This document shows positions 779 through 52,130 of a stretch of DNA of 64,000 bases, piece after piece. Position numbers and translations under genes: made by a program. The DNA lies in contig NC_042997.1 of assembly GCF_006345805.1 (NCBI RefSeq), positions 210,056,001-210,120,000 of the forward strand. The letters run 5' to 3'. Numbering within the stretch: position 1 is the stretch's first letter; the number at the start of each line of letters is the position of its first letter. Under the pieces are notes generated by a model. That model was not told the origin of the DNA and ran no database searches. It saw only the letters and a list, made by a program, of their open reading frames with translations. The stretch is from Octopus sinensis. Its lineage: Eukaryota.

Positions 779-2121
779 TTATTTTTGGAGTATATATCGC
801 TCACATATTCACTCCATTATCGGAGTGGCATTCGAGTAATGTGATAATTTGGTATTAAAACATAACATACCACAAGCATGTACCAGACTTTGTGGATTGT
901 CTAATGATATCTACTGAACTAAGAACACCGTCTGAGCGAGATCGTTGCCAGAGCAACAAGCTGGCCTCCATGCCGATGGCAGGTTAAAAACACCATTCTA
1001 GCGTGATTGTTACCTGCGTCGCCTTTCTGGCACTTGTGCTGGTGGCACGTGAAAACAAAAGCATTCGAGCGAGGTCATTGCTAGTGCCGCTGGACTGGCT
1101 CCTGTGCAGGTGGCACATAAAAAGCACCATTTGAGCATGGCCATTGCCAGTGCCGCCTGACTGGCCCTCATGTCAGTGACACGTAAAAAGCACCCACTAC
1201 ACTCTCGGAGTGGTTGGCATTAGGAAGGGCATCCAGCAGTAGAAACTCTGCCAGATCAAGATTGGAGCCTGGTGCATCCATCTGGTTCGCCAGTCCTCTC
1301 ATGAAGCAGTTTCCAATTTTACCATAACCCGGGTCATCCCTTCTTCATTAGATGCTCCATCAGTCCATATTATACTCAATGTCTTCCTTAAGAGCCACAC
1401 TTCACAGTTCTCCATTTGAAGCCTGGGGCAGCCATCTGGTTCGCCAGCCCTCAGTCAAAATCGTCCAACCCATGCCAGCATGGAAAGCGGACATTAAACG
1501 ACGATGATGATGATTATTCTGAACTGATCAATGATTTCGCGAAGTGAAAAGTGTTCCGTGTTTGTCTTTGAAAGTTGGCTGGATTATAAAAATGCTCTTT
1601 TATTCATAGTTGGAAGTTTTACTTATTGAAATTTGTCATAGAGACCGAAATATATTTAACTTGTATTTTTAAAGATGTTCCAAAAGATAACGTGAAATAT
1701 TGAACTTCAGACAGAATAAAGTAAAATATAATACCGCATCGACTGGCCTCCGTGCTGTGGGCACGTAACAAACACCATCCGATCGTGGCCGTTCACCAGC
1801 CTCGTCTGGCACCTGTGTCGGTGGCACATAAAAAACACCATCCGAGCGTGGCCGTCTGCCAGCCTCGTCTGGCACCTGTGTCGGTGGCACATAAAAAACA
1901 CCATCCGAGCGTGGCCGTTCGCCAGCCTCATCTGGCACCTGTGTCGGTGGCACATAAAATCACCCACTACACTCTCGGAGTGGTTGGCGTTAGGAAGGGC
2001 ATCCAGCTGTAGAAACACTGCCAGATCTGACTGGCCTGGTGCAGCCTTCGGGCTCCCCAGACTCCAGTTGAACCGTCCAACCCATGCTAGCATGGAAAGC
2101 GGACGTTAAATGATGATAATA

Positions 2122-5035: not shown

Positions 5036-5164
5036 CATGTAGATAATTTTTACCTATAAAGGTTATTTTAAGGTACTAATATACTTGGTGAAATTGTTAA
5101 TTAATTGATTGATTAATTAATTAATTTAATTATTAAATTTTACCCTTTTATTATTAATCTAAAA

Positions 5165-5489
5165 TTATATACATATATACATATATATATATACATATAT
5201 ATACATATATACATATACATATATATATATACATATACATATATAATATATATATATATATATACATATATACATATATATATATACATATATATATATA
5301 TACATATTATATATATATACATATATACATATTATATATATACATATATACATATATATATATTACATATATACATATATACATATATACATATACTATA
5401 TATATACAATATACATATATACATATACATATATACATATACATAATATATATATACATATATACATATACATATATACATATATATAA

Positions 5490-5523
<34 letters not shown>

Positions 5524-5586
5524 CATATACATATATATATATATACATATATACATATATATATACATATACATATATACATATAC

Positions 5587-5659
<73 letters not shown>

Positions 5660-5825
5660 TATATATATACACATATATATATATATATACACACATATAT
5701 ATATATATACATATATTATACATATATAATATATATATATATATATACACATATATATATATATATATACACATATATAATATATATATATACACATATA
5801 TATATATATATACATATATATATAC

Positions 5826-5856
<31 letters not shown>

Positions 5857-5857
5857 C

Positions 5858-5888
<31 letters not shown>

Positions 5889-5890
5889 TT
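5165..5890. repeat. Long (TA)/(TATACA) compound microsatellite ending in (GATA)n
   Basis: Direct inspection. Confidence 0.95.
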
Positions 5891-6105: not shown

Positions 6106-6797
6106 TATGTGTGCATGTGTATGTGTGCATACATTGTGTGAGTGCATGCCTTTTGTGCTGTGTGCGTTTTTGTTCCCTGTAACTTGAAACGGTTTCTCTA
6201 CATCTCCACAGAATGAATAGAACTTCTTAAAATGACTGAACTCCCTAAATGGATTAATATGGTCCACCAATGAGGGATGGTCACAATCTGAAAGTTTTAA
6301 AACAAACTTTGTAACGAGAAACCTATCTGAAATTGCCAAATTATATACACACACATGCACACACAGAAGTGTGCGCATGTGTGTGTGTGTGTGCACGCAT
6401 ATAATTAGGTAAACACTATGTGTATAAAAAGGATGAACAGTTGTGTGGATCATGTCCTTCCCAAAGAGATGAAGCAGTGTAAATAAATATTACTTTAGAG
6501 AGAGTGTGTGCATATGTGAGAGAGACAATGTGCATGTAAATGTTGTGTGTAATGATGTGTTATTGGTGTGTGTGTGTGTGTTTGCGTGTGTGTGTGTGTG
6601 TAATGGAGACAAGTACTGACTCTTCCATGTGGCATGCTTAAACAATTGTGAAGATCACTGCACATGAAACCATTGGTTGCCTTGTAAACCTACAAGTAAA
6701 TAATATTTACCCACCAGCGTGGTATGTATTTATCAACTCAGTGTTAAATATTAGATTGCGTGTGAGTGTATACATGCGTGTGTATATATATATATAC

Positions 6798-7025
6798 CGG
6801 AGTAAACACATAAATGTGAAACAAGGTGGGAAAAAAGAGTACTCAAATACCAGTGGTAGAGTAATATGCTTTATTTAAAGCAGCAGAAAATTCAACAAAA
6901 CCTGTTACTCTGAGTTTCTCGTTGCCGTTCATCAGACAGTTTTTACTAGAAAAACTGTCTGATGAACGGCAACGAGAAACTCAGAATAACAGATTTTGTT
7001 GAATTTTCTGCTGCTTTAAATAAAG

Positions 7026-7030
<5 letters not shown>
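6798..7030. mobile_element. Penelope-like pseudo-LTR fragment with inverted partial copy (foldback 6864-7030)
   Basis: Two ~80-nt arms centred on 6947. Each arm has a hammerhead motif followed by AATAAA. The minus arm continues to ~6798. Inverted pLTR ends with hammerheads are typical of Penelope-like elements. Confidence 0.65.
6897..6944 (-). ncRNA. Minimal type-I hammerhead ribozyme motif (Penelope/retrozyme-like), core intact
   Basis: AAAAACUGU-CUGAUGA-ACGGCAACGA-GAAACUCAGAGUA^ACAGGUUUU. Stem I is CUGU/ACAG plus extension, stem III is ACUC/GAGU, the cleavage triplet is GUA. Stem II is weak (2 bp, GCAA loop, A-A closing). Confidence 0.7.
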
Positions 7031-7104
<74 letters not shown>

Positions 7105-7405
7105 TATATATACACCACACACAATGAATATTGTCTCTGTTATTGTACTATTAGTATTGTTTGTGTTGTTGCACTGAGTCAGAGAGGGTGTATAGTGTTG
7201 GTGTGCTGACATTAGCCAGCCTAAAATACTGTGACTTACATAAAAGTTCCCATTTATAAACAACTCTACACATTCGCATTTACAAGCACACATACACGTT
7301 TGTATACTAAATCAACTGTCTATTGTGGTGTTTATATAGTGCCTATGATAAATAGTGCGTCTAGTCACTGAATGCATGTGTATATATGTGTGTGTGCGTG
7401 AATGT

Positions 7406-7437
<32 letters not shown>

Positions 7438-7545: not shown

Positions 7546-52130
<44,585 letters not shown>

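What the first reader, a model, noticed from the sequence alone, without database searches (positions are those of the whole stretch)
6864..7030. Core-intact hammerhead on the ITFG1 sense strand, just upstream of the first canonical poly(A) signal, with an inverted mutant twin
Seen in sequence: about 640 nt after the ITFG1 stop, the sense (minus) strand reads CUGU-CUGAUGA-ACGGCAACGA-GAAACUCAGAGUA^ACAG, a type-I hammerhead with an intact core. I found no AATAAA or ATTAAA between the stop and this point, only weaker TATAAA variants at ~7253, 7331 and 7409. The first AATAAA (6875-6870) lies ~30 nt downstream of the predicted cut (6906/6905). The element is half of a 167-bp palindrome, and the opposite-strand copy has GUA changed to AUA, breaking stem III. 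Established: Penelope-like elements and retrozymes carry such minimal hammerheads, which usually need to dimerise, and inverted pLTR ends are typical. Inference: if the 3'UTR uses this signal, the mRNA carries a self-cleaving site that would remove its poly(A) tail. The upstream antisense arm could sequester that site in an ~80-bp duplex, which is also an ADAR substrate. That would be a candidate TE-derived, editing-sensitive stability switch.
Basis: partly seen in the sequence, partly recalled or inferred. Interest (0 to 1): 0.72.

Follow-up and report, generated by a model that had tools for sequence, protein, structure and literature searches.

The report
Transposon-type hairpin with hammerhead-like relic
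A 167-base inverted repeat just downstream of an ITFG1-like gene contains a sequence that spells a hammerhead ribozyme core, but it is most likely a dead remnant of a mobile element locked inside a very stable hairpin, not a working self-cleaving RNA switch.

Summary
There is an 81-nt/81-nt inverted repeat (96% complementary, 5-nt spacer). All invariant hammerhead core bases lie on the gene's sense strand, with GUA at the predicted cut 640 nt after the stop. The twin copy on the other strand reads AUA. The first AATAAA lies 30 nt further on.

The ribozyme reading does not hold up:
- No Rfam hammerhead model matches, even at E<=10.
- Helix II has only two Watson-Crick pairs, with an A·A mismatch at 10.1/11.1.
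- A descriptor loosened until it accepts this motif also hits 7 of 300 shuffled windows.
- The arm alone folds no better than shuffles, and its best fold is not a hammerhead.
- In the sense transcript the antisense arm comes first, and the hairpin (-128.5 kcal/mol) buries the core, the cut site and the AAUAAA. Forcing the hammerhead fold costs about 78 kcal/mol.
- There is no same-strand partner for a dimer.

The layout fits published Penelope-like element insertions: two 5'-truncated copies head to head, 3' ends outward, next to (TA)44. No other copy could be retrieved, so this origin is unproven. The likely effect, if transcribed, is an ordinary double-stranded RNA structure. Interest is low.

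The parts
6869..6944 (-). Arm A of the palindrome. On the ITFG1-sense (minus) strand it reads 5'->3' outward from the centre and carries the hammerhead-like motif and a terminal AATAAAG.
6897..6944 (-). Hammerhead-like motif. Stem I is AAAACUGU/ACAG(G)UUUU. The core is CUGAUGA...GAAA. Helix II is A-CG-GCAA-CG-A. Helix III is ACU-CAG-AGU. The GUA^ cut is predicted at 6906/6905.
   Evidence: No Rfam hammerhead hit.
6945..6949 (.). 5-nt spacer (ACTAG on the plus strand), which forms the hairpin loop
6950..7025 (+). Arm B, the twin copy, which reads outward on the plus strand. It differs from arm A at two internal positions (G->A, giving AUA, and G->A in stem I). On the ITFG1-sense RNA it is the antisense arm and is transcribed first.
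6870..6875 (-). AATAAA at the outer end of arm A. It is the first canonical poly(A) hexamer after the ITFG1-like stop and is part of the repeat. It is predicted to be base-paired (P = 0.997) in the hairpin.
7019..7024 (+). The matching AATAAA at the outer end of arm B. It reads on the plus strand and appears as UUUAUU on the sense RNA.
7026..7112 (.). (TA)44 microsatellite directly abutting arm B. It may be the insertion target or the site of rearrangement.
6798..6863 (-). 66 nt of unique sequence between arm A (with its ATATG junction at 6864-6868) and a short (TA)7 at 6784-6797. It is either native flank or a one-sided PLE 'tail', and this is unresolved. It contains U-rich and GU-rich stretches that could act as the downstream element of a poly(A) site.
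7546..7605 (-). Last coding exon of the ITFG1-like gene ([19 protein letters not shown]), with the stop at 7548-7546

Best explanation
The feature is a mobile-element-type inverted repeat. It consists of two copies of the same 76-nt terminal segment joined head to head, with 5' ends at the centre and 3' ends (each ending in AATAAAG) pointing outward. It sits against a (TA)44 microsatellite about 520-680 nt downstream of the ITFG1-like stop codon.

The favoured origin is a pair of strongly 5'-truncated 3'-terminal fragments of a Penelope-like (hammerhead-bearing) retroelement. Such a pair would form when both strands of an AT-rich target are cleaved and extended, followed by a snap-back or template switch. 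The hammerhead-like motif is then a degenerate relic of the element's own ribozyme.

In any ITFG1-sense transcript that reaches this point, the antisense arm is made first. The two arms then zip into a continuous duplex of about 76-80 bp that buries the ribozyme core, the cut site and the AAUAAA. No self-cleavage is therefore expected. The realistic consequence is an ordinary long double-stranded RNA structure that could be a substrate for ADAR or Dicer and could occlude the poly(A) signal. It is probably neutral.

Shown here: the anatomy, the absence of any hammerhead model match, the energetics and the poly(A) signal positions. Inferred: the PLE origin, the mode of formation and the RNA-level consequences.
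For: Anatomy:
- Arms are 96% complementary with a 5-nt spacer and abut (TA)44.
- The hammerhead-sense strands read outward, and each arm ends in AATAAAG.

Published PLE features that match:
- Hammerheads lie near the 3' ends, in the pseudo-LTRs.
- A tail is often present at one end only.
- Some clades prefer (TA)n targets. All four points above come from PMC8557442.
- Pairs of minimal hammerheads on opposite strands, and widespread solitary motifs from truncated PLEs, have been described (PMC4209133).
- A purified PLE protein cleaves AT-rich DNA on both strands and extends both (PMC11167929).
- Octopus genomes carry recently active Penelope families (PMC13282606).

Against ribozyme activity:
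- No hammerhead family is reported by Rfam at gathering score, or at E<=10 on 301 nt or 64 nt.
- The strict descriptor and the minimal-hammerhead descriptor (helix II >=4 bp) find nothing.
- The arm alone has an MFE of -7.6 kcal/mol with z = +0.31, and its best fold pairs the core CUGA with UCAG.
- The hammerhead structure scores -1.0 kcal/mol against an ensemble of -8.1, giving P of about 1e-5.
- The hairpin is -128.5 kcal/mol with z = -26. Enforcing the hammerhead in it costs +78 kcal/mol.
- The core, the cut site and the AAUAAA all have P(paired) >= 0.997.
- The PAc PLE hammerhead shows no cleavage without its protein, and no RNA-seq ends map to its cut site.
- Minimal hammerheads cleave poorly in vitro and only as same-strand dimers.
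Against: - No second copy of the arm exists in the 64-kb window, and none could be retrieved from any collection. Membership in a repeat family is therefore unproven.
- There is no PLE reading frame (RT plus GIY-YIG) in the window. The reverse transcriptases present are non-LTR types.
- Helix II (2 bp) is unlike the 7-8 bp helix II described for PLE minimal hammerheads.
- Both arms begin at exactly the same nucleotide. Two independent truncations would not do that.
- The motif's chance rate is not negligible, at about 2% per window under a descriptor fitted after the fact.
- Nearest-neighbour energies ignore tertiary contacts, proteins and helicases, so a minor cleaving population cannot be strictly excluded.
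Confidence: 0.55

Rival explanations
1. The hammerhead is active in the ITFG1 3'UTR and cuts off the poly(A) tail, and the competing hairpin, tuned by ADAR editing, acts as a stability switch.
For: - All invariant core bases and an NUH triplet are present, and helices I and III are in register.
- The motif lies between the stop codon and the first AATAAA.
- A precedent exists for a hammerhead in a 3'UTR, in the Clec2 genes (PMC6155905).
Against: - No Rfam hammerhead match.
- Helix II has 2 bp plus an A·A mismatch at 10.1/11.1, and the strict descriptors fail.
- The hammerhead fold has P of about 1e-5 in the isolated arm and costs +78 kcal/mol in the hairpin.
- The antisense arm is transcribed first.
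- There is no same-strand partner for a dimer.
- PLE minimal hammerheads are nearly inactive alone.
- Editing of the duplex would also change the core adenines (inference).
- The AAUAAA is itself buried in the stem, so it is not known whether this poly(A) signal is used.
Confidence: 0.03
2. It is a foldback MITE, a non-autonomous DNA transposon whose terminal inverted repeats span the whole element, inserted at a TA-rich site. The hammerhead-like motif is a coincidence.
For: - The palindrome is near-perfect with a short spacer.
- The flanks are TA-rich.
- An unrelated tight palindrome of the same general kind lies at 43161-43410 in the same gene.
- MITE families are annotated in octopus.
- The motif occurs by chance in about 2% of shuffled windows.
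Against: - No clean target-site duplication can be read (TG on one side, TA on the other, in a microsatellite context).
- The outward-facing AATAAA at each end is more typical of a retroelement 3' end.
- A chance hammerhead motif falling exactly inside one of the window's two tight palindromes is roughly a 1e-4 event per window (my estimate).
Confidence: 0.15
3. It is a local inverted duplication of native 3'-flanking sequence, created by template switching or hairpin formation at the unstable (TA)44 tract. One arm is original gene flank, the other is its copy, and the motif is a chance one.
For: - The sequence is unique in the window and absent from every collection searched.
- Arm A continues without a break into unique flank.
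- Arm B abuts (TA)44.
- Both arms start at the same nucleotide, as a fold-back copying event would give.
Against: - It requires the hammerhead-like motif to be pure chance within a specific 76 nt.
- The coincidence of PLE-like features (outward 3' ends with AATAAA, motif about 37 nt from the end) would be unexplained.
Confidence: 0.15
4. The hairpin has been co-opted without any ribozyme activity. It would act as a double-stranded RNA element in the 3'UTR (editing, small-RNA production, localisation or retention) and/or as the donor of the gene's main poly(A) signal.
For: - The first canonical AATAAA after the stop is supplied by the repeat, and U-rich and GU-rich sequence follows it.
- Both internal differences between the arms are G·U wobbles on the sense RNA, so the sense hairpin is uninterrupted.
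Against: - Two of two wobbles falling on the sense strand has a one-in-four chance.
- The AAUAAA is paired in the stem.
- The arms differ by only about 2.6%, while a relative is about 21% diverged in flanking DNA. The structure therefore looks young rather than conserved.
- No expression data were available.
Confidence: 0.1
5. It is an assembly or sequencing artefact, a fold-back chimera next to a long microsatellite.
For: Palindromes beside (TA)n tracts are hard to assemble. PLE-type inverted structures are reported to trouble assemblies.
Against: - The arms differ at three positions and the spacer is asymmetric, which a simple fold-back read artefact would not produce.
- The scale (167 bp) is far below typical long-read chimeras.
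Confidence: 0.02

Closest known systems
Penelope-like element (PLE) insertions with minimal hammerheads in their pseudo-LTRs (Cervera & de la Pena 2014, PMC4209133; Craig et al. 2021, PMC8557442; Frangieh et al. 2024, PMC11167929)
   Same: - Type-I topology with a short helix I.
- The motif lies near the 3' end of the unit.
- An extreme 5' truncation sits next to an inverted copy, with 3' ends pointing outward.
- The target is AT-rich or (TA)n.
- Paired motifs on opposite strands are known.
- Intrinsic cleavage is poor.
   Different: - Helix II is 2 bp here, against 7-8 bp in the described minimal hammerheads, and there is an A·A mismatch at 10.1/11.1.
- A 3-bp helix III is present.
- No RT/GIY-YIG frame or other family member was found.
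- Both arms are truncated at the identical nucleotide.
- The two motifs are only about 45 nt apart, rather than 100-700 nt.
'HHR_core' sequences of Naiad-type PLEs (Craig et al. 2021, PMC8557442)
   Same: - CUGANGA and GAAA are separated by a spacer within their 7-17 nt range (10 nt here), in a sequence that does not fit canonical stem/loop descriptors.
- (TA)n insertion bias.
- Tandem or inverted insertion structures.
   Different: - That paper describes cephalopod Naiads as anciently inactivated remnants, whereas these arms differ by only about 2.6%.
- No Naiad coding sequence is nearby.
Discontinuous hammerhead in the 3'UTR of mammalian Clec2 genes (reviewed in PMC6155905)
   Same: A hammerhead motif sits between the stop codon and a poly(A) signal of a protein-coding mRNA.
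   Different: - Clec2 is a type-III motif with a full core, stable helices and demonstrated self-cleavage, and it is conserved across several mammals.
- Here the helices are marginal, no model matches, the motif is sequestered in a hairpin, and conservation is untested.
Metazoan non-LTR retrozymes (Cervera & de la Pena 2020, PMC7229834; bioRxiv 10.64898/2026.07.22.740005)
   Same: Type-I hammerhead linked to PLE pseudo-LTR-derived, non-autonomous sequence.
   Different: - Retrozymes are direct tandem repeats, which supply same-strand dimer partners and give rise to circular RNAs.
- Here there is a single inverted pair and no tandem copy.
Inverted-repeat transposon pairs in 3'UTRs that form long double-stranded RNA, such as inverted Alu pairs edited by ADAR (from my own knowledge, not checked here)
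   Same: This is what the element would most probably work like if transcribed: an intramolecular duplex of about 76-80 bp in a 3' region, in an animal group known for heavy A-to-I editing.
   Different: - The arms are contiguous, in a tight fold-back with a 5-nt loop, rather than two separate insertions.
- No editing or expression data were examined.

Membership tests
Hammerhead ribozyme (type I) | Invariant core: C3 U4 G5 A6 N7 G8 A9, G12 A13 A14, the A15.1-U16.1 pair, and H17 at the cleavage site | tested here: met
   CUGAUGA ... GAAA ... U-A^ at 6935-6906 on the minus strand. The twin copy keeps the core but has a C·A mismatch at 15.2/16.2.
Hammerhead ribozyme (type I) | Three helices closing the core, including a helix II that starts with a 10.1-11.1 base pair | tested here: not met
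   Helix I has 4 bp (plus 4 more after a bulge) and helix III has 3 bp with a 3-nt loop. Helix II has only C-G and G-C, with an A·A mismatch at 10.1/11.1. The descriptor requiring helix II >=3 bp without a mismatch gives 0 hits.
Hammerhead ribozyme (type I) | Match to a curated covariance model (the Rfam hammerhead families) | tested here: not met
   No hammerhead family is reported at gathering score on the window, or at E<=10 on 6800-7100 or on 6885-6948 alone.
Hammerhead ribozyme (type I) | The hammerhead secondary structure is a populated fold of the RNA | tested here: not met
   The arm alone has an MFE of -7.6 kcal/mol with z = +0.31, and its fold is not a hammerhead. The hammerhead fold scores -1.0 against an ensemble of -8.1, giving P of about 1e-5, and costs +78 kcal/mol in the full hairpin.
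Hammerhead ribozyme (type I) | Conservation and compensatory changes in the helices across related copies | not testable with these tools
   No related copy was found in the window or in any accessible collection. No cephalopod genome was searchable.
Hammerhead ribozyme (type I) | Site-specific self-cleavage | not testable with these tools
   This needs an in vitro transcription and cleavage assay, or RNA-end mapping.
Penelope-like element minimal hammerhead / pseudo-LTR fragment | Minimal-hammerhead architecture: helix I of 4-5 bp, a long helix II (7-8 bp) with an unpaired 5' nucleotide, and helix III absent or tiny (definition from PMC4209133) | tested here: not met
   Helix I fits. Helix II has 2 bp. 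A scan for minimal hammerheads with helix II >=4 bp finds none in the window.
Penelope-like element minimal hammerhead / pseudo-LTR fragment | Insertion architecture: 5'-truncated unit with an adjacent inverted 5'-truncated copy, 3' ends outward, and an AT-rich or (TA)n target | tested here: met
   compared with the descriptions.
Penelope-like element minimal hammerhead / pseudo-LTR fragment | Sequence continuity with, or homology to, an element encoding RT plus a GIY-YIG endonuclease, as part of a multi-copy family | tested here: inconclusive
   There is no PLE frame in the window, only non-LTR reverse transcriptases, and no other copy was retrievable. The source genome itself could not be searched.
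Non-LTR retrozyme | Direct tandem repeats, each carrying a type-I hammerhead on the same strand | tested here: not met
   There are only two copies, and they are in inverted orientation.
Foldback MITE | Terminal inverted repeats flanked by a target-site duplication, as part of a multi-copy family | tested here: inconclusive
   The inverted repeats are present trivially. The flanks read ..TAATATG / TATATA.., so no unambiguous duplication can be read in the microsatellite context. Copy number is untestable.
microRNA precursor (Rfam near-threshold hits MIR395, mir-980 and others) | Score at or above the family gathering threshold, on one defined strand | tested here: not met
   All hits are below gathering (for example MIR395 at 53.1 against 56). 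They appear symmetrically on both strands and across many unrelated families, which is the usual generic-hairpin artefact.

The most novel reading that the evidence does not exclude
A host mRNA 3'UTR carries a transposon-derived hammerhead whose cleavage is normally blocked by pairing with its own inverted twin. Cleavage would be released only when the duplex is remodelled by a helicase, by partial A-to-I editing of the antisense arm, or by a PLE-encoded protein supplied in trans. That would couple ITFG1 mRNA stability to editing or to transposon activity.
Probability: 0.03. Interest if true: 0.75.

Novelty: new member of a known kind. Interest (0 to 1): 0.17.

Why it matters
If the ribozyme reading were true, this would be the first invertebrate case of a self-cleaving RNA gating a host mRNA's poly(A) tail, and the first link between cephalopod RNA editing and ribozyme control.

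The evidence points instead to a routine outcome. A mobile-element-type fold-back in a gene's 3' region happens to preserve, or to mimic, a hammerhead core. Three smaller points remain of value:
- It may be an unusually compact example (167 bp) of the head-to-head insertion products expected from a PLE enzyme that primes on both target strands.
- It shows that the 'first canonical poly(A) signal' of the gene is supplied by the repeat itself.
- It is a caution for motif-based scans. An intact core is not enough: a relaxed descriptor hits about 2% of shuffled 64-kb windows.

Tried and rejected
- Rfam on the whole window, on 301 nt and on the 64-nt arm found no hammerhead. The only matches were sub-threshold microRNA-like hits on both strands, which I rejected as hairpin artefacts.
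- The core 22-mer was searched in public contigs. Viral contigs gave 0 hits. Metagenome contigs gave 1 hit, L002, a GC-rich bacterial coding sequence (..KLMNGNEKLD..) with unrelated flanks, which I rejected as a chance match.
- Three protein homology searches were run. The ITFG1 exon queries returned only P0001, an exon-1 reading frame from a related cephalopod read set (Logan SRR11869391), with no 3' region. Translations of the arms returned nothing at E<=10.
- An exhaustive representative search with the arm peptide gave two repetitive proteins with spurious multi-stretch matches, which I rejected.
- Exact look-ups of five mechanical reading frames around the palindrome, made to fetch other assemblies of the locus, found none on record.
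- Low-stringency blastn of the arm and of the 66-67-nt flank against the window gave only self hits.
- Supplementary PLE consensus files of the key papers were not held.
- I considered the ATG inside CUGAUGA (reading frame MNGNEKLRV..., 29 aa) as a possible PLE start codon, by analogy with the Poseidon element. In that element the start lies after G8, and no homologue was found, so I did not pursue it.

Full report
**What is in the sequence.** The region holds an inverted repeat with arms at 6864-6944 and 6950-7030. The arms are 81 nt long and 96% complementary, and a 5-nt spacer separates them. Aligning the two arms in the same orientation shows a 76-nt unit: AAAAACTGTCTGATGAACGGCAACGAGAAACTCAGAGTAACAGGTTTTGTTGAATTTTCTGCTGCTTTAAATAAAG. 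The two copies differ at two internal positions, both G in the minus-strand copy and A in the plus-strand copy. A (C/T)ATAT junction follows each unit.

On the minus strand, 6944->6897 reads stem I (AAAACUGU), CUGAUGA, ACGGCAACGA, GAAA, CUCAGAG, U, A, and then ACAGGUUUU. Every invariant hammerhead core position is therefore present, with a GUA triplet and a predicted cut at 6906/6905. The twin has AUA, which puts a C·A mismatch in helix III. Arm B abuts a (TA)44 tract at 7026-7112. A short (TA)7 lies 66-67 nt beyond arm A.

**Gene context.** Reading frames on the minus strand include an exon-1/2 region that matches FG-GAP_3 (PF13517, E 3.8e-9). They also include a transmembrane exon (8222-8088) and a final exon ending ..AHKFHFDAM* with its stop at 7548-7546. 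This is consistent with an ITFG1-type gene. The exact C-terminal similarity to ITFG1 is from my memory and was not tested.

The predicted cut is 640 nt after the stop. The first AATAAA or ATTAAA on that strand is at 6875-6870 and the next is at 5152. TATAAA variants lie at 7414, 7336 and 7258.

**Is it a hammerhead?**
- Rfam reports no hammerhead family at gathering thresholds. It reports none at E<=10 on 301 nt, or on the 64-nt arm alone, where hits of only about 11-14 bits were still listed. The sub-threshold microRNA hits appear on both strands and in many families, which is the usual response to any long hairpin.
- Helix II consists of C-G and G-C under a GCAA loop, with an A·A mismatch at 10.1/11.1.
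- A descriptor loosened just enough to accept this motif (helix I >=4 bp, helix II >=2 bp with the first pair allowed to mismatch, helix III >=3 bp) finds this one locus in the window. It also finds at least one locus in 7 of 300 dinucleotide shuffles. Requiring helix II >=3 bp without a mismatch finds nothing.
- A minimal-hammerhead descriptor with helix II >=4 bp finds nothing in the window. Published PLE minimal hammerheads have helix II of 7-8 bp.

**Energetics.**
- The arm alone folds to -7.6 kcal/mol with z = +0.31, and 123 of 200 shuffles fold at least as well. Its best structure pairs the core CUGA with the UCAG of helix III.
- The hammerhead secondary structure scores -1.0 kcal/mol against an ensemble of -8.1, which gives a probability of about 1e-5.
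- The full palindrome folds into an uninterrupted hairpin of -128.5 kcal/mol with z = -26. Forcing the hammerhead helices within it costs +78 kcal/mol.
- In a 511-nt model transcript, the core, the GAAA, the cleavage triplet and the AAUAAA all have pairing probabilities >=0.997.

On the gene's sense strand the antisense arm is transcribed first. Each hammerhead nucleotide therefore meets its complement as it emerges (inference). The twin is on the other strand, so no same-strand dimer partner exists in the window.

**What the literature adds.**
- PLE minimal hammerheads are thought to act as same-strand dimers, and they cleave poorly in vitro even then (PMC4209133).
- The hammerhead of a biochemically active Poseidon element showed no cleavage without the element's protein, and no RNA-seq ends map to its cut site (PMC11167929).
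- The one accepted case of a hammerhead in an mRNA 3'UTR, in Clec2, is a full and active motif conserved in several mammals (PMC6155905).
- Promiscuous ADAR editing of a perfect duplex would also change the invariant adenines of the core. Editing would therefore be more likely to inactivate the motif than to release it (inference from hammerhead core requirements).

**What it most likely is.** The layout matches published PLE insertion products in four respects:
- extreme 5' truncation;
- an inverted 5'-truncated copy placed head to head, with 3' ends outward;
- hammerheads near the 3' end, and a tail often at one end only;
- a preference for AT-rich or (TA)n targets (PMC8557442; PMC11167929).

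Opposite-strand pairs of minimal hammerheads, and many solitary motifs from truncated PLEs, were already noted in 2014. The purified PLE protein cleaves and extends both target strands, which offers a direct route to a head-to-head product. Octopus genomes carry recently active Penelope families (PMC13282606). The 10-nt spacer between CUGAUGA and GAAA also fits the 'HHR_core' class reported for Naiad PLEs, which do not satisfy canonical stem descriptors.

I therefore favour a PLE-type relic. This rests on architecture alone. No other copy of the arm exists in the window, no PLE frame is present, and no cephalopod genome could be searched.

Two alternatives remain open. One is a foldback MITE. 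The other is a local inverted duplication generated at the (TA)44 tract, with the motif a coincidence. Both arms start at the same nucleotide, which favours a snap-back or fold-back step in any scenario and remains unexplained under simple dual priming.

**Age.** The arms differ at 2 of 76 internal positions. A relative's exon-1 region (L001, from a public cephalopod read set) is only 79% identical to the window, including across non-coding sequence. I used the calibration quoted for octopus repeats, in which a distance of 0.09 from the consensus corresponds to about 25 My. On that basis the arms separated, or were last homogenised, on the order of a few million years ago, with very wide error. 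I would predict that the structure is absent from that relative. This is an inference and was not tested.

**Verdict.** The descriptive part of the interpretation (transposon-like, PLE-like, sequestering hairpin) is reasonable. The functional proposal of a self-cleaving, editing-sensitive stability switch is not supported. The feature is best filed as a new instance of a known kind: a mobile-element-type inverted repeat carrying a degenerate hammerhead-like motif, sitting in or just beyond a gene's 3'UTR. If transcribed, its expected behaviour is that of a long double-stranded RNA stem that also hides the AAUAAA it brings with it. Interest is low.

Noticed in passing
window 43161-43277 / 43294-43410: A second tight fold-back palindrome (117-nt arms, 91% complementary, 16-nt spacer), unrelated in sequence, lies inside an intron of the same gene. 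It suggests that hairpin-type repeats are common in this genome.
   Followed up: partly
window 30914-31846: A 100-bp satellite with 9.4 copies at 96% identity lies within an intron.
   Followed up: no
window 1760-1959, 13721-14047, 24233-24435 and many dispersed copies: A SINE-like repeat family with internal 62-66-bp tandem units is present in both orientations. It produces recurring pseudo-reading-frames (..[12 protein letters not shown]..) across the window.
   Followed up: no
window ~24070-21300 (-), and 11080-10811 (-): A non-LTR retrotransposon with a reverse transcriptase domain (RVT_1, E 1e-31) sits in an intron, and a second small RT scrap lies elsewhere. Neither is Penelope-like.
   Followed up: partly
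window 5166-5889 and 50530-51100: There is a very long (TA)~366 tract about 1 kb beyond the palindrome, and a 38-bp minisatellite (15 copies) near exon 1.
   Followed up: no
window 6908/6986 and 6902/6992 (the arm differences): Both internal differences between the arms are G in the minus-strand copy and A in the plus-strand copy. They form G·U wobbles in the gene-sense hairpin but C·A mismatches in the antisense RNA. Two of two falling this way has a one-in-four chance, so this is not evidence of selection.
   Followed up: partly
L002 1225-1246 (metagenome contig Ga0307362_103283): An exact 22-nt match to the hammerhead core segment falls inside a GC-rich bacterial coding sequence and even in the same reading frame (MNGNEKL). 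The flanks are unrelated, so it is a chance match.
   Followed up: yes
L001 7-1804 vs window 53088-51071: A public read-set contig from a related cephalopod covers the exon-1 region at 79% nucleotide identity. That read set could be mined for the orthologous 3' region, but these tools could not reach it.
   Followed up: partly
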